A DNA stretch of 64,000 nucleotides from Pristiophorus japonicus. Its lineage: Eukaryota. Shown here piece by piece: positions 218 to 48,039 of this stretch. The notes under the pieces were generated by a model. That model was not told the DNA's origin, searched no databases, and worked only from the letters and a program-made list of their open reading frames with translations. Numbering within the stretch: the first letter of the stretch is position 1; each line of letters begins with the position of its first letter. The stretch lies in NCBI RefSeq assembly GCF_044704955.1, contig NC_091993.1:117118001-117182000 (forward strand), given 5' to 3'. Made by a program: the position numbers and the translations under genes.

Positions 218-541
218 ATTCAGAAACGTTCAGTTGTACTGGAACCATTTCGTCGTAGCCCATGATTGTAATGCCGCACCAGTAATGCCCCGCGTCCTCC
301 ATGGATAGTTCGGTTATGGTTACTGCAAACACCCCACTGGTCTGGTTGTCCATAGCAATGATCCTTTTGCCAACGGTTGCACGCTGTTTTTGAGTACGAG
401 CAATCACACTGCATGATTTTCTCTCCAACCCTTTGCACAAGTACTTCTCGTGGTGTTTGTAATATGATACACGATACTGACACTTTATGGTGACAGCTTC
501 TCCTAAGATCCCGTACACCTGTTTTGGCCCAGCTACTCCGG
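218..541 (-). CDS. Gene A exon 3, second V-set Ig domain; gene continues beyond the window
   Basis: 324 nt, CTGCAG| acceptor, T|GTAAGC donor, phase 1/1; VTIKC, KYLCKG..SC, DAGHYWCG. Confidence 0.92.
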
Positions 542-926
542 CTGCAGGTATAAGAGGACAATGTATAAGTGCTTAAGGTCATGCAGAGCACACACGGGCT
601 GTACAGAGTGAGAGCTAGCGCAGAATCGCAGTATTTTATGGCATTCGGCCCATCATGTCTGTGCTGGCTCTGTGAAAGAGCTGTCCACTTATTCCAATCC
701 CTTTGACTTTTAAAAGAGCAAAAAGTCCGTAGACTTTTAAAATATTATTTTTCAAGGATGGCCAGATCCTTCCTACTTTACCAGTCAAACTGATCCCTGA
801 AAGATCTTATGAAGTGACAGGGATAGATAATTCATTCATTTTTAGCCAAACAATTCACCTTGGTGGGCAATTTTGGGACAAATTCTATGTTCAACCTCAG
901 CTTTGAACACTAAAGCATCTTCTAGA

Positions 927-1228: not shown

Positions 1229-1434
1229 CATTTAAGACTATTTTAATTTAATTCTTCTGCACTATCAGTCAAATGTACAGGTTATTTATTGTTCCTGAAT
1301 ATATAATTTAAGTCTAAGAATAATTTTTTAATCTCTGAGCAAGACCAAGAATGTTTAAACAGGTAACAGCCACAGGGAACAGTTTATTATTGGCATGCTT
1401 ATATTGTACTTGAAGTAAAATGGTGATTAATTAC

Positions 1435-1764
1435 TTAGCTTATCTTCAAGGACGTTCAATTTGACAGGAGCCATTTCATCCTTTCCCAGCATTGTTATCC
1501 CACACCAATACCACCCTGCATCTTCGAATGATAATTGTTTCATTGTCACAGAAAATATCCCACTGGTTTTGTTGTCCACAACGTTGAATCTTTCCTGCCA
1601 TCTTCTTTGAGTGCCAGCCATCACTGTGCAGGAATATCTCCGTGTTCCTTTACACCAGTATTTCTCGGAATTCCTGTTAAGTGGTGTGCTGTAGCGACAA
1701 TCGACAGTGACGGATCCTCCTAACTTTCCGTTCACCTCCTGTGGTCCCGATATTCCGTGGGAAC
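1435..1764 (-). CDS. Gene A exon 2, first V-set Ig domain (CD300/pIgR-like)
   Basis: CCAACAG| acceptor; GGSVTVDC, KYWCKG..SC, DAGWYWCG; expected donor reads ATAAG, in-phase GTAATT donor 9 nt further on (3' end less certain). Confidence 0.9.
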
Positions 1765-1805
1765 CTGTTGGAACAGAGAGCAGTGGGTTGTGTCCTGACC
1801 ATGTA

Positions 1806-21012: not shown

Positions 21013-21340
21013 ACATAAGAACAGGATTACCCCTTGAGCCGGTTCCACGATTCAATGAGATTATGGCTGCTTTGTATGTTAACTCCATCTACCCGCCTTG
21101 GCTCCGGAACCCTTAATACCTTTGCCTAACAAACATCTACCTATTTCAGTTTAGAAATTTTCAATTGATCCCCAGCAGCTTTTTAGGAGAAGAGAGGTTC
21201 AGATTTCCTCTACTCTTTGCGTAAAGAAGTGCTTCCTGACAGCACCCTTGAATGGCCTAGCTCTAATTTTAAGGTTGTGCTCCCTTGCTCTGGACACCTC
21301 CATCAGAACAATCGTTTTTCCCTAGCCACCCTGTCAGGTT
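21013..21340 (-). mobile_element. Degenerate CR1 3' fragment in the putative gene B 3'UTR
   Basis: Similarity to the other CR1 3' ends in the window. Confidence 0.65.
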
Positions 21341-21558
21341 CAAAGGGCACCTGAGGGCAAAGGTTGCAAGGATCTATGCCGCTGGCAAATATTGGAAAAA
21401 TGCGGGCACTCTGCCTGTGACTTTTCCGACATGCACCAGCTAGTCGCGAGGTGCAAAGTTATACTCATGCTCTTAATGGAATCATTTACAATTTACAGGG
21501 ATATCGTGCTTCAGAAAATGGGTGAGAACTAGCCTGCAGAAGTCATGTTGGAAAAAAA

Positions 21559-21750
21559 TTACTTTTTGAACACAATTGTAGAATACTCCATTGGTTCTGA
21601 AGCAGGAGTCTCAATAACTGAAGGCTTGATTGCCTCTTGACTGTTGGAAGGTTTCACGTTATCGTAAGTAGGAGCGTCCTCCTGAGGGCGATCGCTGGGC
21701 AGAATCGTCACAGTGGCATAAGTAACTCCTTCTGCCAGCTCTTTGGACAA
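21559..21750 (-). CDS. Gene B exon 6, terminal cytoplasmic exon with ITIM and two further Tyr motifs
   Basis: CCTTCAG| acceptor phase 0; VTYATV (ITIM consensus), PTYDNV (YxN), MEYSTI; TAA at 21561-21559. Confidence 0.9.
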   Translation of the reverse strand: MSKELAEGVTYATVTILPSDRPQEDAPTYDNVKPSNSQEAIKPSVIETPASEPMEYSTIVFKK

Positions 21751-22694
21751 CTGAAGGCAAAGAGTACAAGGAAGTGATTAATGGGAATGGAGCAACGAAT
21801 CAATTCAGCATTAAAATACAAAAATGAAAATTTAGATAATCTTTTATTTTAGAAAAAAACACTTTACATTACTGTACTATCTGTAAATAGGGAGTCAAAT
21901 CGATATCAAATGCAACTACTTGGGTTAATCAACAACTTTGTTTTTGGAAAGAATTTTAACCATTGCAGCACCACTCTCAAGTTCAAGGGATCACTGGCTA
22001 TTGGTCGGGCCTCCGTCACAGTTTGATGTATAAAAATGCCTCAGTAATTGACTTTTTCCAGTTCTGACAAAGAGTCACAGACCTGAAACGTTAACTCTGC
22101 TTCTCGCTCCACAGATGCTGCCTGACCTGCTGAGCATTTCCCAGCATTTTCTGTGTTTATTTCAGCAATTGACCTGGTTGCATATATTACATGGCCAAGT
22201 CTCTTAGCTTCAAGGCTGGAGTCCAGCCAGTGAAAACCCAGGCCCCAAAATTCTGCTTGGGCCTTGGGTGCTTCTGCAACAAATGGAGAGCAGGAAAATG
22301 GGGAGGTGCCTCACAGCTGAAAATTTCCCCAACGGGGAAGGGAGGAAGAGGGCAAGCCTTCCACTACTCCCCTCCCACCCCATGTCAAGGGGACATGTTG
22401 AGGGTGTGGGGGGGGGGGGGGGAGCTCACAGGCTACCCTGATAATACTGACCATTAACTCCTCGGGAAGCCTGAGCAAAATTTTCACCAGCTGAGAGCCG
22501 GTGAGAGTCCCGCTGAGGCCCTGGGGAAAGGCCCGAGAACTCGCGCAGCTGGAGGTGATCGATTACTTTAAGTGGCCCAGTGCTCCCTTGAGTTACAATT
22601 CTCCAACATGCCTTTACAGGCAAGGGCTGCCCTCCTTGATTTTACAGTGGTGGCCATGCTCTGGATTCAGGAAGGGGCCTGGGCCTTTGTCCAT

Positions 22695-23055
22695 CATAGG
22701 GACAGGAGGAGGCCATTCAGCCCCTCGAGCCTGTTCCGCCATTCAATGAGATCATGGCTGATCTGCGACCTAACTCCAAATACCTGCCTTTCCCCCATAT
22801 CTCTCAATACCTTTGTTTAACAAAAAGCTAATCAATCTCAGATTTAAAATCAACAATGGACCTTGCATTGACCGCCATTTACAGAACAGAAGGCCAAACT
22901 TCTGCCACCTTTGTGTTTAGAAATGTTTCCTAACAATACTTCTGAAAGGCCTGGCTTTAATTTTTAGACTATGCCCCCTAGTCCTAGATTCCCCAACTAG
23001 CAGAAATACTTTCTCTCAATCTACCCTATCTGTTCCCCTTAATATCTTAAAAACT
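22695..23055 (-). mobile_element. CR1 3' fragment
   Basis: Similarity to the other CR1 3' ends. Confidence 0.7.
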
Positions 23056-23239
23056 GCAAGCTCAGGTCTTGCTTTGCCTCAATGGCTGGGGGAAGAGAGG
23101 GATGGGGGAGGGAAATTGAATTTTGGCCTTTGCCCCAAGTTTTGCTAACCAATCCTCCCACATACACAATAAATATTGGGAGCCAGGCAGAAGAAGAAAC
23201 CAGGTAGTTCAGAGATTCCAAACTGCAAGCTGTAGGGAT

Positions 23240-23505
23240 AACAACAATAAATTGTATTTATATAGCGCCTTTAACGCAGTAAAACTTCCCAGGAGTGTTA
23301 TAAGGCACAAATTTGACACCGAGCCACATAAGGAAAAATTAGGGCAGGTGACCAAAACCTTGGTCAAAGAGGTAGATCTTAAGGAGTTTCTTAAAAGAGG
23401 AAAGAGAGGTGGAGAAGTTTAGGTATGAAATTCCAGAGCTTGAGGCCGAGGCAACAGAAGGCACGGCCTCCAATAGTGGAGCGATTATCATCAGGGGTGA
23501 TCAAA
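23240..23505 (-). mobile_element. L2-like LINE 3' end
   Basis: (TTG)n tail and GGCGCTATATAAAT end shared with the DeuSINE. Confidence 0.75.
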
Positions 23506-23605
23506 ACCTTAAAAACAATAGGATAGACCTGATTAGGTTAAAAATAAATAAATTAAAGTTAAAAATTGGATAAGGAATGGGAGAAAAAGAAAATAGTGAG
23601 GATGA

Positions 23606-25842
23606 AGATGGGTGACTTTAATATGTATATAGATTCGGCTAACCAAACTGGAAACAATACGGTGGAGGAGGATTTCCTGGAGTGCATAAGGGATGGTTTT
23701 CTAGACCAATATGTCGAGGAACCAACTAGGGGAGAGGCTGTCTTAGACTGGGTGTTGTGTAATGAGAGAGGATTAATTTGCAATCTCGTTGTGCGAGGCC
23801 CCTTGGGGAAGAGTGACCATAATATGGTGGAATTCTACATTAGGATGGAGAATGAAACAATTAATTCAGAGACCATGGTCCAGAACTTAAAGAAGGGTAA
23901 CTTTGAAGGTATGAGGCGTGAATTGGCTAGGATAGATTGGTGAATGATACTTAAGGGGTTGACAGTGGATGGGCAATGGCAGACATTTAGAGACCGCATG
24001 GATGAACTACAACAATTGTACATCCCTGTCTGGTGTAAAAATAAAAAAGGGAAGATGGCTCAACCGTGGCTATCAAGGGAAATCAGGGATAGTATTAAAG
24101 CCAAGGAAGTGGCATACAAATTGGCCAGAAATAGCAGCGAACCCGGGGACTGGGAGAAATTTAGAACTCAGCAGAGGAGGACAAAAGGTTTGATTAGGGC
24201 AGGGAAAATAGAGTATGAGAGATAGCTTGCAGGGAACATTAAAATGGACTGCAAAAGCTTCTATAGATATGTAAAGAGAAAAAGGTTAGTAAAGACAAAC
24301 GTAGGTCCCCTGCAGTCAGAATCAGGGGAAGTCATAACTGACAGTCATTTTCCAACATTCCATTGACTCTGGATCAGTTCCTATGGAGTGGAGGGTAGCC
24401 AATGTAACCCCACTTTTTAAAAAAGGAGGGAGAGAGAAAACAGGGAATTATAGACCAGTCAGCCTGACATCGGTAGTGGGTAAAATGATGGAATCAATTA
24501 TTAAGGATGTCATAGCAGCGCATTTGGAAAGAGGTGACATGATAGGTCCAAGTCAGCATGGATTTGTGAAAGGGAAATCATGCTTGACAAATCTTCTGGA
24601 ATTTTTTGAGGATGTTTCCAGTAGAGTGGACAAGGGAGAACCAGTTGATGTGGTGTATTTGGACTTTCAGAAGGCTTTCGACAAGGTCCCACACAAGAGA
24701 TTAATGTGCAAAGTTAAAGCACATGGGATTGGGGGTAGTGTGCTGACATGGATTGAGAACTGCTTTCCAGACAGGAAGCAAAGAGTAGGAGTAAATGGGT
24801 ACTTTTCAGAATGGCAGACAGTGACTAGTGGGGTACCGCAAGGTTCTGTGCTGGGGCCCCAGCTGTTTACACTGTACATTAATGATTTGGACGAGGGGAT
24901 TAAATGTAGTATCTCCAAGTTTGCGGATGACACTAAGTTGGGTGGCAGTGTGAGGTCGAGGAGGATGCTATGAGGCTGCAGAGTGACTTGGATAGGTTAG
25001 GTGAGTGGGCAAATGCATGGAAGATGAAGTATAATGTGGATAAATGTGAGGTAATCCACTTTGGTTGTAAAAACAGAGAGACAGACTATTATCTGAATGG
25101 TGACAGATTAGGAAAAGGGGAGGTGCAACGAGACCTGGGTGTCATGGTACATCAGTCATTGAAGGTTGGCATGCAGGTACAGCAGGCAGTTAAGAAGGCA
25201 AATCGCATGTTGGTCTTCATAGCGAGGGGATTTGAGTACAGGGGCAGGGATGTGTTACTACAGTTGTACAGGGCCTTGGTGAGGCCACACCTGGAGTATT
25301 GTGTACAGTTTTGGTCTCCTAACTTGAGGAAGGACATTCTTGCTATTGAGGGAGTGCAGCGAAGGTTCACCAGACTGATTCCCGGGATGGCGGGACTGAC
25401 ATATCAAGAAAGACTGGATCAATTGGGCTTGTATTCACTGGAGTTCAGAAGAATGAGAGGGGGTCTCATAGAAACGTTTAAAATTCTGATGGGTTTAGAC
25501 AGGTTAGATGCAGGAAGAATGTTCCCAATGTTGGGGAAGTCCTGAACCAGGGGTCACAGTCTAAGGATAAGGGATAAACCATTTAGGACCGAGATGAGGA
25601 GAAACTTCTTCACCCAGAGAGTGGTGAACCTGTGGAATTCTCTACCACAGAAAGTTGTTGAGGCCAATTCACCAAATATATTCAAAAGGGAGTTACTACT
25701 AAGGGGATCAAGGGGTATGGCGAGAAAGCAGGAATGGGGTACTGAAGTTGCATGTTCAGCCATGAACTCATTGAATGGCAGTGCAGGCTCGAAGGGTCGA
25801 ATGGCCTACTCCTGCATCTATTTTCTATGCTTCTATGTTTCT
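23606..25842 (+). mobile_element. 5'-truncated CR1, same subfamily as 49059-54004, with ~250-bp internal deletion near 24340
   Basis: ORF2 peptides nearly identical to those of the full copy; TTCTATG tail. Confidence 0.95.
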
Positions 25843-25894
25843 AAAATTAAAATATCTTTTTGGTATTTAATAATTTTTTAATTTTAAGTAAGCA

Positions 25895-26026
25895 TGACAT
25901 CTGTGTGCCAGGAACAAAGCAAAAGGGAATACTTATAGCAGAATTTTAAGTAAAATAATTTATACTTTTAATTCAAATTCTGCTGTAAGTATTCCCTTTT
26001 GTGCTGTTCCCTGCTCACAGATATCA
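25895..26026. other. 132-nt imperfect palindrome (hairpin with ~61-bp stem, 10-nt loop)
   Basis: CAAAAGGGAATACTTATAGCAGAATTT pairs with AAATTCTGCTGTAAGTATTCCCTTTTG. Confidence 0.85.
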
Positions 26027-26131
26027 AGGTTAATACTTAATTTTATATGCTTTGTTGGGAATATTAGACTTATGAAATTTTCACAGGAGCTTTGAAATTA
26101 CATTGCAGAATAATAAGTATGAACATTTGTT

Positions 26132-26435
26132 AGAAACATAGAAACATAGAAAATAAGTGCAGGAGCAGGCCATTCGACCCTTCGAGACTGCACCACAATT
26201 CAATATGACCATGGTTGATCATGCAACTTTAGTTCCCCACTCCCACCTTCTCGCCATAACCCCTGATCCCTTTAGCCGTAAGGGCCACACCTAACTCCCT
26301 GTTGAATATGTCCAACGAACTGGACTCAACAACTTTCTGTGGTAGAGAATTCCACAGGTTTACCACTCTCTGGGTGAAAAAGTTTCTCCTCATCTTGGTC
26401 CTATATGGCTTACCCCTTATCCTTAGACTGTGACC
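26132..26435 (-). mobile_element. CR1 3' fragment
   Basis: AGAAACATAGAAACATAG tail, matches 49059-49360. Confidence 0.85.
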
Positions 26436-26489
26436 ATTTGAAACTCCTTTCCTGCTCTTTCAAACAGGTTGACAACTCACAAAAATGGC

Positions 26490-26950
26490 TGCAGTCCCAT
26501 TTCCCCATTTCCCCTGTGCTCGCTGATCTACATTGGCTCTTGGCCCAGCAATGCCTCAAATTTTAAAATTCTCAACCTTGTTTTCAAATCCCTCCTTAAT
26601 CTTGCTCCTCCGTATCTCTGTGACCTCCTCCAGCCCTATAAACCATCCGAGATCTCTGCGCTCCTCCAATGCTGGCCTCTTGCGAATTCCCGATTTTCAG
26701 CGCTCCACCATTGACGGCCGTGCCTTCAGCTGCCTAGACCCTAAGCTCTGAAATTCCCTCCCTAAATCTCTCTGCCTCTCTACAGCTCTCTTCTCCTTTA
26801 AGAGGCTCCTTAAATCCTGACTCTTTGACCTATCCGATTATCTCCTTCTGTGGCTCGGTATCACAATGTGTTTGATAACCCTCCTGTGAAGCGCCTTGGG
26901 ACGTTTTACTACATTAACAGTGCTATATAAATGCAAGTTGTTGTTGTTGA
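26490..26950 (+). mobile_element. L2-like LINE 3' end
   Basis: FKIL.LVFKSL..LAPPYL, RSLRSS, GRAFS; (TTG)n tail. Confidence 0.85.
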
Positions 26951-27063
26951 GAGAGAAATTTCAACTGAATGCATAAACGTGTACATCTTTGATCCCAACA
27001 CACCACTTCAGGCTAGTAGATTTAGATAAACCACCCTGTTTCAATGAGAGGTTGGAGCCTTAC

Positions 27064-27119
27064 CACAGAGTTCGACTTTGGAATAGAATTTTCTATTGTT
27101 GACTCTTTCTCTCTGTTAT
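27064..27119 (-). CDS. Gene B exon 5, cytoplasmic (DNREKESTIENSIPKSNSV)
   Basis: TTTTCTAG| acceptor, GTG|GTAAGG donor, 56 nt, phase 1 to 0, open frame linking exons 4 and 6. Confidence 0.8.
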
Positions 27120-27849
27120 CTAGAAAATACAAATGTGAAGGTAATGAATGAAGCCAAGTAAAACAGCAGGAAGATTCACAATGTAACTCTTTTTTCAGTT
27201 GTGTTAAATGTCATTTAAAAAAATTTATTGCACTTTTTAATATTCCCAAGTCAATATTAGATGAAAAACTGGGCTCAATTAGAGTATTGAGCTAATTTTG
27301 GGGAAATTAAACTGGACTATACTGCACGACAACTTCAGCCATTGTGTAACAGTTAAAACCTCGCCTCACAACAATTCATTGCATAATAAAACATTGACAT
27401 CAAACATGGGTTTGTATTGGTTACTTATTGTTCGGTAAAATGCTTCCAATCTGTGTCAGGCAGTTATATTAAGACCCATTATATTTTCCGATATTGTTTC
27501 ACTGCTCAATCACCTTTCATTAACTTTTAATTGGATCCTGCAATTGTTTTTATATTTAGCTATTAGTAGGATTTTTGCTAATTGTGTTTTCTTGCGTATT
27601 AAATATTTGATCTCTTGTGGCAATTCTCTTGGGCAAAAGTGTAAAAACAACTCTGCCCCAATTTGCTTTCCTGTTTTTTTTTCTCATCTTTCCCACAGCA
27701 GCTGTTGATGATTCTGCCATCGCCATTTACACCCTATCTAGACTCATCTTTTGTTTCTTAACTTGCCCCATTACCATCTCCTTTTGCCTTGCAACATCAT
27801 CTCTTTTTGTCTCTTAATCTGTCCTGCCTTCCACCCTATCTTATATTGA

Positions 27850-30018: not shown

Positions 30019-31267
30019 AAGCTGCCAATGGATTAAGATGTCTTTTTCTTAGCCTTTCCAATGGGTGTAAAAATGTTTGTCACTTGCCTTTAAATGCCTG
30101 CATCCCTTTAAATTGCACTCTGCACCCGTCCAACGCGTCACCTGGCGCTGTGAATCATTAAACACAAGGGCTGATTCACAAGCAATTGCCAACTACAGAT
30201 TACCATTCAGGTGAGATTTGTACGATTGAACTAACATATTAATTATATGGAAATTGGCCCCATTAACTGGTCATTTGTTTCAGTTATTGTTTGCAGGGCC
30301 TTGCTATAAATTGTTCTTTTGTTCTTTACAACCCAACCCCTCCCCCTTTCAGCACTAAGAATCTGTTACATTTCGAACTATTGTCAGTTCTGACGAAGGG
30401 TCATCGCCCTGAAACGTTAACTCTGTTTCTCGCCACAGATGCTGCCTGACCCGCTGAGATTTCCAGCATTTTCAGTTTCTATTATAAATTGTATTATTTG
30501 GCTGCCCTATTTGTCTACTTAACAATGATGACACTTCAAGAGTAATTCATTGAATGTAAAGTGTCTCGGGGTGACCCGAGGGTGCTGTATAAAAGGAATC
30601 CCTTTTTGTTTTCTACATGCTTTTGGAGTTGAGGACTATCTGCCTCCTCTAATTATTCTCGAAGCTAAGAGCACAGAAGACTAACTATTCGCAGAACAAC
30701 AAATATGCAATTTGCAGGCGATTCCGCCTGAGATTACCCATCAGGTAATTAGATAATAGCACTTCTATTTACAAAGGAATCATTTAGTATTTAATAACTC
30801 ATTCATTCATGATATTTGTTCGAGATATTATAATTGTTTCGTTTCTCCATCCAGTACCAAACCGGAGCATGGTTTTCACTCTCCACACACAAATGATCGA
30901 ACAAATACAGACAAGTAGTCCTTTTAATTAAGAAATAAAATCACCTTTGTGTTGCTAACGTGACTCCCAAGCATTTTAAAATCATCAGCGAGAAACAATA
31001 CACGTTGCTATGTGCCACATACAAATTGCCGGAATGTTACTGGCAATCCTGTCACCATTATATTGTGCTGAATAGACAGTGCAACAGAGTTTCTATTCTT
31101 CCAAAGAACTACAGGAAGTACCGTCACTTTTGGCTGACTGCTTCACTGAGATTAGTGCCAGATTGGAATGAAAATATGAGGAGATTTCTGTGCTGACGAG
31201 ACGTACGTACTGCTGAACTGCAGATATATGTAGAACCTCAACTGCAAATCAAGACACGATCCGTGAA

Positions 31268-32240: not shown

Positions 32241-32338
32241 AGAAGGTTGTTCCATATCACATGGTTGGTTTTCGTCTAGTTCCTTTGAAAGATAGAATGA
32301 CTCCGCTGCATGAAAATTGGTTAAGTTTCTGAACTTAC

Positions 32339-32439
32339 CGTTATCTTTGTGCTTTCTTATTTTTTTGATAACTAGGATCACAAGTCCGAGAAGCATCATC
32401 GCCAAAGTCCCAAAGATTATCCCGAGTATTATGAAAAGC
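32339..32439 (-). CDS. Gene B exon 4, transmembrane plus basic stop-transfer (LFIILGIIFGTLAMMLLGLVILVI-KKIRKHKDN)
   Basis: 24 apolar residues with no charge followed by KKIRK; AAG| acceptor, G|GTAAGT donor, phase 2 to 1. Confidence 0.9.
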
Positions 32440-37871: not shown

Positions 37872-37908
37872 CTTAGTCTTTCCTTGTCCGAAGGAAATAG
37901 CTTTTGAC
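37872..37908 (-). CDS. Gene B exon 3, 37-nt stalk exon (GQKLFPSDKERLR)
   Basis: TTTTTAACAG| acceptor and AG|GTAAAA donor; phase 1 to 2, exactly what is needed to join the Ig exon to the TM exon. Confidence 0.8.
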
Positions 37909-38222: not shown

Positions 38223-38555
38223 CTTCAGTAACTTTAAGTTCTGTGGGACTTAAATAGTCCAGAAGGTGATGTCTTTCTATTCCACACCAGTACCACCCCT
38301 TATCGTTGGTTGTTAATTGATCCATTTGTACCGTAAGTTGTCCATTTTTATTATCAGCTGAAATTTTTATTTTGCCATCATGGCTTTTCATCATAGGACC
38401 GTGGGTCTGTACTAACACATGACAGGTCGCCCTGTTGTAGCCTCTGCACCAATACTTTTGATGATTGCTGTAATACGGGTCAAATCTGCAAGTGATAGTG
38501 ACTGGTCTTCCCACGGTTGCACTCGTTACCTTTGGTCCACTTATTGCATGCGCAA
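38223..38555 (-). CDS. Gene B exon 2, V-set Ig domain of CD300/pIgR/TREM type
   Basis: 333 nt, acceptor TTACAG|, donor G|GTAGGA, phase 1/1; motifs VTITC, KYWCRG..C (extra C-C' Cys pair), DKGWYWCG. Confidence 0.95.
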
Positions 38556-47999: not shown

Positions 48000-48039
48000 C
48001 TGATAGGAAAGCAATGAACAGCAGAAAGGTAAACCCCAT
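48000..48039 (-). CDS. Gene B exon 1 (signal peptide MGFTFLLFIAFLS+G) of CD300/pIgR-like inhibitory receptor
   Basis: ATG at 48039, 13 hydrophobic codons, phase-1 donor CAG|GTAAGA; joins exon 2 to give MGFTFLLFIAFLSVAHA-ISGP. Confidence 0.85.

What the first reader, a model, noticed from the sequence alone, without database searches (positions are those of the whole stretch)
21559..21750. Three-tyrosine tail collinear with the distal tail of mammalian CD300LF
Seen: VTYATV, then QEDAPTYDNV, then EPMEYSTI at the C-terminus, all in one exon. From memory, human CD300LF ends ISYASL...QEPTYCNM...EPTEYSTI: same order, a YxN (Grb2-SH2 type) middle motif and a near-identical terminal motif. Inference: a mixed inhibitory/adaptor-recruiting tail conserved since the jawed-vertebrate ancestor, which is notable in a fast-evolving family. 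The middle motif ends in V, not M, so the PI3K p85 YxxM site would be missing.
Basis: partly seen in the sequence, partly recalled or inferred. Interest (0 to 1): 0.78.

Follow-up and report, generated by a model that had tools for sequence, protein, structure and literature searches.

The report
Sawshark inhibitory receptor tail exon
This is the real, expressed last exon of a shark immune-receptor gene whose tail carries two very conserved inhibitory docking sites and one optional adaptor site; it resembles the human CD300LF tail only in short motifs that unrelated receptors also carry.

Summary
Observation confirmed. Minus-strand 21750-21559 encodes exactly the stated peptide, ending VFKK-stop. 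It is exon 6 of a six-exon gene (48039-21559) identical to the public 252-aa Pristiophorus japonicus model P0001. Contigs of 3 runs (one study) join exon 5 to exon 6 at canonical splice sites.

Interpretation partly supported. Against orthology:
- The IgV domain scores higher to mammalian TMIGD3 (63.5-77.4 bits) than to any solved CD300 domain (55.4 bits or less).
- A caecilian protein with the same first and last motifs groups with TMIGD3 (100/99).
- The middle YxN tyrosine is missing in 4 of 11 elasmobranch orthologues and in the caecilian.
- A tail profile finds only elasmobranch proteins among 1.84 billion.
- A salmon pIgR-like tail aligns as well as the caecilian tail.
- Siglec-5/9, CD33 and gp130 carry near-identical cores.

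Best reading: an inhibitory receptor with two invariant predicted SHP-docking tyrosines and a dispensable Grb2-type site. It is a new member of a known kind. The scan noted neighbouring receptor genes of this genome before, not this tail.

The parts
21559..21750 (-). Exon 6, the last coding exon: 63 codons plus TAA. It holds the ITIM VTYATV (Tyr200 of P0001), the YxN site PTYDNV (Tyr218) and the C-terminal MEYSTIVFKK (Tyr245). The 3'UTR continues below 21300.
   Evidence: sequence, acceptor, phase 0; spliced contigs in 3 runs; a contig runs past 21300; tyrosine positions.
27064..27119 (-). Exon 5: cytoplasmic (D)NREKESTIENSIPKSNSV, 56 nt. It enters in phase 1 and leaves in phase 0; the donor is GTG|gtaagg.
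   Evidence: the joint 21750->27064.
32339..32439 (-). Exon 4: transmembrane segment LFIILGIIFGTLAMMLLGLVILVI, with no charged residue, plus KKIRKHKDN. The donor is GATAACG|gtaagt.
37872..37908 (-). Exon 3: short stalk (G)QKLFPSDKERL(R), 37 nt.
38223..38555 (-). Exon 2: CD300/pIgR/TMIGD3-type IgV domain with four cysteines (two disulfides), phase 1-1.
   Evidence: Pfam V-set, E 8.1e-13; pIgR, CLM-1, CD300A.
48000..48039 (-). Exon 1, coding part: ATG and signal peptide MGFTFLLFIAFLS. The donor is TCAG|gtaaga.

Best explanation
The stretch is the terminal coding exon of an expressed type I membrane receptor gene of the Japanese sawshark. The public model is P0001, 252 aa: signal peptide, one CD300/pIgR/TMIGD3-type IgV domain, a short stalk, an uncharged transmembrane helix and an 88-residue tail.

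Shown:
- the gene structure and the exon 5-6 splice;
- the domain type;
- one-to-one orthologues in sharks and rays;
- [GA]VTYA[TSA]V and EPxEYST[IV] unchanged in 11 of 11 orthologues, with a fixed Tyr-Tyr spacing of 45 in the 10 whose positions were tabulated;
- YxNV present in 7 of 11 orthologues.

Inferred mechanism: after ligand binding, Src-family kinases phosphorylate Tyr200 (a canonical ITIM) and Tyr245. Tyr245 is ITIM-like, and it fits the ITSM pattern TxYxxV in the 4 orthologues that have Thr at -2. The pair docks the tandem SH2 domains of SHP-2 or SHP-1, and possibly SOCS3, because the EYSTVV core equals the printed mouse gp130 SHP2/SOCS3 site. This damps activating receptors, such as the Arg-TM paralogues encoded nearby. 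Tyr218 (YDNV) is a Grb2-SH2-type pYxN site. It is an optional extra that was lost twice in sharks.

Evolution, inferred: the gene belongs with the TMIGD3 lineage at least as much as with CD300LF. The first and last motifs are shared with a caecilian TMIGD3-clade protein. That suggests they predate the split of cartilaginous and bony vertebrates, though the tail alignment itself is weak. The motif-level likeness to human CD300LF is real, but it cannot be told apart from deep paralogy or convergence on the same SH2 partners.
For: - Identity with P0001 and the exon map.
- Spliced contigs in 3 runs of one study.
- IgV type: V-set, 8.1e-13; pIgR domains, CLM-1 55 bits, CLM-6 55.4, CD300A 52.9.
- Orthologues and motif conservation. 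The first and last motifs are present in 11 of 11. The middle Tyr is present in 7 of 11, namely Pristiophorus, Carcharodon, Pristis, Narcine, Mobula, Rhinoraja and P0012. It is absent in Heptranchias, Rhincodon, Chiloscyllium and P0042.
- TMIGD3 link: the same IgV query gives 77.4, 68.8, 67.0 and 63.5 bits to 4 mammalian TMIGD3 models and 78.5 to caecilian P0023. P0023 scores 92-114 bits to TMIGD3 but 57 or less to CLM-1. P0023 groups with the TMIGD3 sequences at 100/99. The P0023 tail reads ...EDGVTYSTV...PASTEYSTISYK.
- Human CLM1 distal peptide.
- CD300f signalling motifs in the literature.
- The gp130 SHP2/SOCS3 site VQYSTVVH / STASTVEYSTVVHS.
Against: - No binding or function was tested; the mechanism rests on motif rules.
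- The sawshark has Met at -2 of Tyr245, which fits neither the strict ITIM nor the ITSM pattern.
- The TMIGD3 link rests on bit scores and on a tree that holds no mammalian CD300 sequence. The node joining the elasmobranch clade to TMIGD3 is weak (77/92). A slower rate in TMIGD3 could mimic closeness.
- No ADORA3 exon, the mammalian partner of TMIGD3, lies in the 64-kb window.
- 4 of 4 mammalian TMIGD3 models lack any ITIM.
- The caecilian model could be a mis-joined prediction; its locus could not be fetched.
- The shark-caecilian tail alignment is only modestly above shuffles (score 45, z 3.6, 16 of 2000), and the salmon tail does as well (score 48, 24 of 2000).
Confidence: 0.6

Rival explanations
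1. One reading: the shark gene is the CD300LF orthologue. Its three-tyrosine distal tail (ITIM, YxN, EYSTI) has been kept by descent since the jawed-vertebrate ancestor as a mixed inhibitory and adaptor-recruiting module.
For: - The two distal human motifs are printed in the same order, with similar spacing (21 against 27) and a near-terminal position.
- By eye, 7 of 10 residues are identical around the last tyrosine. Six are identical around the middle one if a 2-residue gap is allowed.
- Three shark orthologues and the fused model P0042 read EPTEYST, the same seven letters as the human peptide.
- NCBI names most orthologues CMRF35-like molecule 1.
- YxNV is ancestral for elasmobranchs by parsimony: 5 of 5 batoids and both shark superorders have it.
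Against: - The IgV is closer to TMIGD3 than to any solved CD300 domain.
- The word search with the tail (7 hits of 16 candidates, all elasmobranch) and the tail profile (2 hits with E up to 0.001 in 1.84 billion, both elasmobranch) did not reach CD300LF.
- The tail profile and the single exon give 0 hits at E up to 10 in the PDB set. That set holds a 330-aa mouse CLM-1 chain, 5or7_C. Whether that chain includes the tail was not verified.
- The middle Tyr was lost in 4 of 11 orthologues and is absent in the caecilian.
- ISYASL is unverified.
Confidence: 0.2
2. Convergence: the likeness to CD300LF is not inherited. Tails of inhibitory receptors are short disordered strings. They drift freely except at SH2-docking cores, so selection for the same partners (SHP-1/2, Grb2) produced the same cores in the same workable order more than once.
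For: - Unrelated receptors print nearly the same cores. Siglec-5/9 have a proximal LHYASL and a distal TEYSEI (passage). CD33 has ELHYASLNFH...STEYSEVRTQ (table). gp130 has VQYSTVVH in human and STASTVEYSTVVHS in mouse as its SHP2/SOCS3 site (passage).
- Teleost pIgR-like tails repeat VTYSTV and end in YSTV, and one aligns as well as the caecilian tail.
- The middle site comes and goes within elasmobranchs.
Against: - Residues that SH2 rules do not require also match the human peptide: E-P at -4/-3 of the last Tyr, P-T before the middle Tyr, and Q-E upstream.
- The receptors share a homologous IgV domain anyway.
- The caecilian tail shares E[ED]GVTY and PAS..EYSTI with sharks.
Confidence: 0.3
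3. Artefact: a chance ORF or a decayed pseudo-exon next to repeats, wrongly added to a gene model.
For: The exon sits among dense LINE fragments. No listed run is on record as RNA.
Against: - Spliced contigs with canonical splice sites occur in 3 runs.
- The exon is 57-78% identical to the ten elasmobranch orthologues of alignment A2, without any indel.
- All six exons fit the public model.
Confidence: 0.02

Closest known systems
Mammalian CD300LF (CD300f, CLM-1, IREM-1, LMIR3)
   Same: - A single CD300-type IgV domain, an uncharged TM helix and a long tail with ITIMs.
- The printed human distal tail has PTYxN, then EPxEYSTI near the C-terminus, in the same order as the sawshark.
- Grb2 and SHP recruitment are reported for CD300f (passages).
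   Different: - The shark middle site is YDNV: YxN but not the YxxM p85 site.
- The spacing is 27, not 21.
- The shark tail has 3 tyrosines. Five for the human protein is recalled, from no call.
- The IgV scores only 55 bits, below TMIGD3.
- No library-level tail match was found.
- Orthology and exon phase were not testable.
TMIGD3 (transmembrane and immunoglobulin domain containing 3), including the caecilian protein P0023 that groups with it
   Same: - It is the best-scoring mammalian IgV relative among those tested, at 63.5-77.4 bits.
- UniRef names P0001 'TMIGD3-like'.
- Caecilian P0023 sits in the TMIGD3 clade at 100/99 and carries GVTYSTV ... TEYSTISYK, like the shark first and last motifs.
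   Different: - 4 of 4 mammalian TMIGD3 models have short tails without an ITIM.
- Three of those four are fused with ADORA3 exon 1, and no ADORA3 exon lies in the window.
- The caecilian has no middle YxN site.
- The node joining the shark and TMIGD3 clades is weak.
CD33-related Siglecs (Siglec-5, Siglec-9, CD33)
   Same: A proximal canonical ITIM plus a distal, near-C-terminal [ST]EYSx[IV] switch-like motif that recruits SHP phosphatases (passages).
   Different: Their ectodomains are unrelated: a sialic-acid-binding V-set domain plus C2 domains. No YxN site between the two motifs appears in the printed stretches. The distal core is YSE[IV], not YST[IV].
gp130 SHP2/SOCS3 docking site
   Same: The EYSTVV core of three shark orthologues and P0042 is letter for letter the printed mouse gp130 site. 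The human site is QYSTVV.
   Different: gp130 is a cytokine-receptor chain, so there is no family relation. This is a functional analogy only.
Skate and zebrafish MDIRs and teleost pIgR-like / CD300-like receptors
   Same: Clustered activating and inhibitory receptors with CD300/pIgR/TREM-like V domains in cartilaginous and bony fish (passage of PMC3031540). Teleost tails carry VTYSTV-type ITIMs.
   Different: The teleost genes fetched have two or more V domains and repeated ITIMs.

Membership tests
CD300 / CMRF35-like family (broad) | A single extracellular V-type Ig domain with the YWC(R/K) motif and a second disulfide | tested here: met
   Pfam V-set E 8.1e-13. PDB matches to CLM-1, CLM-6 and CD300A at about 1e-13. 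KYWCRG...C and GWYWCG align with pIgR domain 1 cysteines (alignment). The feature is defined in a passage of PMC3031540.
CD300 / CMRF35-like family (broad) | Inhibitory members have an uncharged TM helix and a long tail with ITIM(s) | tested here: met
   The TM segment LFIILGIIFGTLAMMLLGLVILVI has no charged residue. VTYATV fits (I/L/V)xYxx(L/V) as printed.
CD300LF orthologue | The IgV is closest to CD300LF among mammalian relatives (reciprocal best match) | tested here: not met
   The same query gives 55 bits to CLM-1 chains and 63.5-77.4 bits to 4 TMIGD3 models. Limit: only solved CD300 domains could be scored.
CD300LF orthologue | Conserved synteny with the CD300 cluster, and conserved last-exon boundary and phase | not testable with these tools
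Sawshark intron 5 is phase 0.
CD300LF orthologue | A p85 PI3K site (YxxM) in the tail | tested here: not met
   The sawshark tail tyrosines read YATV, YDNV and YSTI; none has Met at +3.
CD300LF orthologue | A tail detectably similar to CD300LF tails above background | tested here: inconclusive
   The motif-level match to the printed human peptide is real. However, the PDB searches gave 0 hits. The word and profile searches found only elasmobranch proteins. The human peptide was not put into any alignment tool, because it is not a stored sequence.
TMIGD3 orthologue | The IgV groups with TMIGD3 to the exclusion of other V domains | tested here: inconclusive
   It has the highest bits among the mammalian relatives tested. 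The caecilian bridge groups at 100/99. The shark-TMIGD3 node has only 77/92 support, and no CD300 sequence is in the tree.
TMIGD3 orthologue | Linkage or shared exons with ADORA3 | tested here: not met
   tblastn of two TMIGD3-ADORA3 fusion models against the window matches only the V exons. The window is only 64 kb, so linkage further away is not excluded.
ITIM / ITSM-bearing inhibitory receptor (functional class) | At least one (I/L/V/S)xYxx(L/V/I) motif, and often a second distal TxYxx(V/I) | tested here: met
   VTYATV is present in 11 of 11 orthologues. The distal site is TEYSTV in 4 (Heptranchias, Carcharodon, Rhincodon, P0042), [IL]EYSTI in 6, and MEYSTI in the sawshark. Binding was not tested.
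Grb2-SH2 docking site (pYxN) | Tyr followed by Asn at +2, conserved among orthologues | tested here: inconclusive
   It is present in the sawshark (YDNV) and in 7 of 11 orthologues. It is replaced by SNNV, LEKL (twice) and HEKV in 4, and is absent in the caecilian.

The most novel reading that the evidence does not exclude
TMIGD3 began as an ITIM-bearing, SHP-recruiting inhibitory receptor. The elasmobranch 'CLM-1-like' gene and the caecilian TMIGD3-clade gene keep the ancestral tail (E-x-G-V-T-Y-[AS]-T-V ... E-Y-S-T-I near the C-terminus), while mammals replaced it with a tyrosine-free tail. The distal tail of CD300LF would be a paralogous survivor of the same pre-gnathostome signalling module. 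A poorly understood human gene, TMIGD3, would then gain a testable ancestral function. The module would be among the oldest conserved inhibitory tails known.
Probability: 0.3. Interest if true: 0.55.

Novelty: new member of a known kind. Interest (0 to 1): 0.35.

Why it matters
It shows that a paired-receptor-type inhibitory IgV receptor has kept two docking tyrosines and their exact spacing through the whole radiation of sharks and rays, within an otherwise fast-evolving receptor cluster. That marks these two sites as the functional core and the YxN site as optional.

It also corrects the expectation raised by automatic names. The gene is not clearly CD300LF and may be the shark counterpart of TMIGD3. 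If the TMIGD3 link holds, it gives a concrete hypothesis for the ancestral role of an understudied human gene.

As a finding it is otherwise ordinary: the gene is already in public annotation, and ITIM tails of this style are common.

Tried and rejected
- PDB sequence searches with the last exon alone and with the 11-row tail profile A2 gave 0 hits at E up to 10. The mouse CLM-1 tail could therefore not be displayed or compared.
- The ESM Atlas search on tail residues 170-252 gave no usable hit by features. The structure hits were meaningless, as expected for a disordered tail.
- Pfam gave a sub-threshold SIT (PF15330) match on TM plus tail of 4 of 4 orthologues scanned (E 2.7e-4 to 0.11, 13.5-21.8 bits against a cut-off of 27.6). 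The match vanished when the 11 tails were scanned alone. Then no SIT match appeared, and only DUF4692/RHEX matched, in 4 of 11 at best E 0.013. I therefore rejected it as driven by the TM segment.
- The listing of cluster members on 4 proteins added only accession numbers.
- The look-up of sequencing runs listed no holder on record as RNA. The three holders of unknown kind nevertheless proved to carry the spliced form.
- Paper searches for elasmobranch CD300, MDIR and TMIGD3 evolution found no paper on this gene or its tail. 'Not in print' rests on those five searches of the held library only. The primary MDIR paper is not held.
- Motif search returned only noise from ordinary words. One search found nothing relevant. 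Papers PMC4151829 and PMC3596959 are not held.
- The supplements of PMC7242328 (its Table S3) were not seen and may list further CLM1 motifs.
- I considered a chance ORF and rejected it.
- I looked for a second tail-exon copy in the window and found none.
- I did no structure prediction, because the claim concerns a disordered tail.
Full report
WHAT IS THERE

The exon follows a good acceptor (ctttgccttcag|) and opens in phase 0.

A word search with the IgV-exon ORF returned one protein among 34 candidates. This is P0001, a 252-aa UniRef model from Pristiophorus japonicus named 'transmembrane domain-containing protein TMIGD3-like'. All 252 residues map at 100% identity to six minus-strand segments of the window. 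Reading the printed splice sites gives these bounds:
- exon 1: 48039-48000 (ATG and signal peptide);
- exon 2: 38555-38223 (IgV, phase 1-1);
- exon 3: 37908-37872 (stalk);
- exon 4: 32439-32339 (uncharged TM helix plus KKIRKHKDN);
- exon 5: 27119-27064;
- exon 6: 21750-21559.

The lengths sum to 759 nt. All donors are GT and all acceptors are AG. The window is therefore sawshark genome, and the finding is the last coding exon of an annotated gene.

IS IT REAL AND EXPRESSED

No listed run holding the stretch is on record as RNA. I laid the contigs of four runs on 21300-27200. Three of them (X9, X10, X11; one study; library kind unknown) carry a joint 21750->27064. It skips 5313 bases with ends CT..AC, which is GT..AG on the coding strand. 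The fourth run (X1) has no such joint.
- X9 has a 1283-nt contig that covers 21300-21750 and runs on past the laid stretch.
- A unique intron bin (22482-22678) has depth 0.
- Repeat-filled intron bins are very deep because of other copies.

So the exon 5-6 splice of the public model is seen in transcribed material, and the 3'UTR extends below 21300. These are contigs from one study, so I make no claim about expression level or tissue.

WHAT KIND OF RECEPTOR

The exon-2 ORF matches Pfam V-set (E 8.1e-13). Among solved structures it matches pIgR domains, CLM-1/CD300LF (55 bits), CLM-6 (55.4) and CD300A (52.9). The four cysteines align with those of pIgR domain 1. The tail exon and the TM exon match no Pfam family.

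The gene lies in a cluster:
- Two further V exons of the same type lie downstream at 1768-1433 and 545-219.
- Earlier notes of this scan place an Arg-TM activating relative just beyond the window end, and a two-V ITIM gene 124 kb before its start. I did not check either note.

CONSERVATION OF THE TAIL

The word search with residues 170-252 of P0001 found 7 proteins among 16 candidates, all elasmobranch. The search with the alignment profile added batoid orthologues. The profile search of 1.84 billion representatives returned two proteins: P0012, and P0042, a 638-aa fused model of an orectolobiform shark. Together these give 11 distinct orthologues:
- Pristiophorus, Heptranchias, Carcharodon, Rhincodon and Chiloscyllium;
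- P0042;
- Pristis, Narcine, Mobula and Rhinoraja;
- P0012.

In all 11 the first motif is [GA]VTYA[TSA]V and the last is EPxEYST[IV][VA]FKK-stop. The 63-residue exon has no indel. The tyrosines keep the spacings 18, 27 and 45.

The middle site behaves differently:
- It reads YDNV, YNNV or YANV in 7 of 11: Pristiophorus, Carcharodon, Pristis, Narcine, Mobula, Rhinoraja and P0012.
- It reads SNNV in Heptranchias, LEKL in Rhincodon and P0042, and HEKV in Chiloscyllium.

It is present in all five batoids and in both shark superorders. By parsimony it is ancestral for elasmobranchs and was lost twice, so it is dispensable.

THE COMPARISON WITH CD300LF

I could not fetch a mammalian CD300LF protein with the tools. 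A passage of it prints human CLM1 from residue 251, for the variant p.S251Y: YLTLGAEDQEPTYCNMGHLSSHLPGRGPEEPTEYSTIS.

By eye:
- Around the last tyrosine, 7 of 10 residues are identical (SEPMEYSTIV against EEPTEYSTIS).
- Three shark orthologues (Heptranchias, Carcharodon, Rhincodon) and P0042 read EPTEYST outright.
- Around the middle tyrosine, PTYxN is shared. QE upstream is also shared if a 2-residue gap is allowed.
- The Tyr-Tyr spacing is 21 in human against 27 in the sawshark.
- ISYASL was found in no paper. Only S251-L252 is consistent with it.

Passages in two papers say that CD300f has ITIMs plus Grb2 and p85 sites. A third describes two ITIMs, one ITSM and a p85 site. The resemblance is therefore real at the level of motifs.

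WHY I DO NOT ACCEPT ORTHOLOGY OR PROVEN DESCENT

1. The IgV is nearer to TMIGD3.
- With the same IgV query and the same program, four mammalian TMIGD3 models score 77.4, 68.8, 67.0 and 63.5 bits, and a caecilian protein (P0023) scores 78.5. No solved CD300 domain exceeds 55.4 bits.
- NCBI names P0023 'CMRF35-like molecule 1 isoform X2'. Yet it scores 92-114 bits to TMIGD3 and 57 or less to CLM-1. In a maximum-likelihood tree of 56 V domains it groups with the TMIGD3 sequences at 100/99.
- The tail of P0023 reads ...EDGVTYSTVVHHPSKFNEPCQFPASTEYSTISYK. That is the shark's first and last motifs with no middle tyrosine.
- The 4 of 4 mammalian TMIGD3 models have no ITIM.

2. Nothing outside elasmobranchs reaches significance with the tail.
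- The single exon and the profile each give 0 hits at E up to 10 in the PDB set, which holds a 330-aa mouse CLM-1 chain. Whether that chain includes the tail was not verified.
- The profile finds 2 proteins with E up to 0.001 in 1.84 billion, both elasmobranch.

3. Pairwise local alignment of the sawshark exon against ten other tails, with 2000 shuffles each:
- caecilian tail: score 45 (z 3.6; 16 of 2000 shuffles reach it);
- salmon pIgR-like tail: score 48 (z 2.9; 24 of 2000);
- Clarias: score 39 (93 of 2000);
- the three mammalian TMIGD3 tails: no better than shuffles for two (648 and 867 of 2000), and marginal for the third (Eptesicus, 88 of 2000).

A more distant ITIM tail thus aligns as well as the best candidate homologue.

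4. Unrelated receptors print almost the same cores.
- Siglec-5/9 have a proximal LHYASL and a distal TEYSEI.
- CD33 has ELHYASLNFH...STEYSEVRTQ.
- The gp130 SHP2/SOCS3 site is VQYSTVVH in human and STASTVEYSTVVHS in mouse.

The layout of a proximal ITIM plus a near-terminal xEYSx[IV] is therefore not specific to CD300LF. The features that remain specific are E-P before the last motif and the PTYxN site, and the latter is the unstable one.

LIMITS OF MY OWN READING

- The tree holds no mammalian CD300 sequence.
- The node joining the elasmobranch clade to TMIGD3 is weak (77/92).
- Bit scores can reflect evolutionary rate and not only kinship.
- No ADORA3 exon lies in the window.
For the same reason, synteny and the last-exon phase in other vertebrates were not compared.
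- The human peptide comes from a paper and is not a stored sequence. I did not put it into any alignment or shuffle test.

HOW IT MOST LIKELY WORKS

This is inferred from motif rules, not tested.
- The receptor is an inhibitory partner within a cluster of activating and inhibitory IgV receptors.
- Phosphorylated Tyr200 (VTYATV, a canonical ITIM) and Tyr245 would dock the two SH2 domains of SHP-2 or SHP-1. Tyr245 is MEYSTI in the sawshark and TEYSTV in four orthologues, where it fits the switch-motif pattern quoted.
- The fixed 45-residue spacing fits a two-point clamp.
- The identity of EYSTVV with the mouse gp130 site suggests SHP2 and perhaps SOCS3 as partners.
- Phosphorylated Tyr218 (YDNV) fits the Grb2 SH2 rule pYxN. 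That rule is established knowledge and comes from no call. This site adds an adaptor branch in the lineages that keep it.

NOVELTY

The gene is already in public annotation. ITIM receptors of this family are known in cartilaginous fish as MDIRs (passage). Five searches of the held library found no paper on this gene or tail.

I class it as a new member of a known kind, of modest interest. The more interesting open reading is that the shark and caecilian genes show TMIGD3 to have been an ITIM receptor ancestrally.

Noticed in passing
window 30083-30148 (-): Intron 4 holds APGDALDGCRVQFKGMQAFKGK. It is 64% identical to the 24-aa cassette exon found only in the long isoforms of batoid orthologues (P0005, P0008, P0010, P0011). 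The acceptor cacag| is intact. However, the frame meets TGA right after KGK, and the only GT there gives 64 nt instead of 72. It looks like a decayed cassette, or one that would truncate the protein before the ITIMs.
   Followed up: partly
window 1433-1768 and 219-545 (-): The two V exons of the next gene downstream pair at 98/85 and 95/94 with domains 2 and 3 of P0042, an orectolobiform model that fuses the ITIM-gene orthologue with a two-V gene. The gene order ITIM gene then two-V gene is therefore conserved between distant sharks.
   Followed up: partly
P0023 (Geotrypetes seraphini, XP_033775151.1): The protein is named CMRF35-like molecule 1 isoform X2, but its IgV groups with mammalian TMIGD3 (100/99). 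It carries an ITIM tail that 4 of 4 mammalian TMIGD3 models lack. Either the name is misleading, or the model is a mis-join.
   Followed up: partly
window 32271-32338 (-), start of intron 4: Read in frame past the exon-4 donor, the intron gives ...FYLSKELDE, which resembles the opening LSKELAE of exon 6, just before a LINE reverse-transcriptase fragment begins. This may be chance, or the stump of an old tail-exon copy broken by the insertion.
   Followed up: no
P0002, P0003 (precomputed Pfam column): The database lists PF27946.1 for the Heptranchias and Carcharodon orthologues. That family did not appear in my own Pfam scans of these two proteins, and I could not learn what it is.
   Followed up: no
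window 22088-27012: Intron 5 is filled with LINE/CR1-type fragments whose words are extremely deep in the contigs of all four runs (up to about 9e5). Copies of these elements elsewhere are therefore abundant in the same libraries.
   Followed up: no
P0013 (Stegostoma) and P0014 (Chiloscyllium): These models of 138 and 180 aa, named CMRF35-like molecule 3 and 5, have IgV domains that pair tightly (100/91 and 100/95) with those of the ITIM-gene orthologues P0042 and P0007. They end before or instead of the TM helix. They may be soluble or truncated isoforms, or annotation fragments.
   Followed up: no
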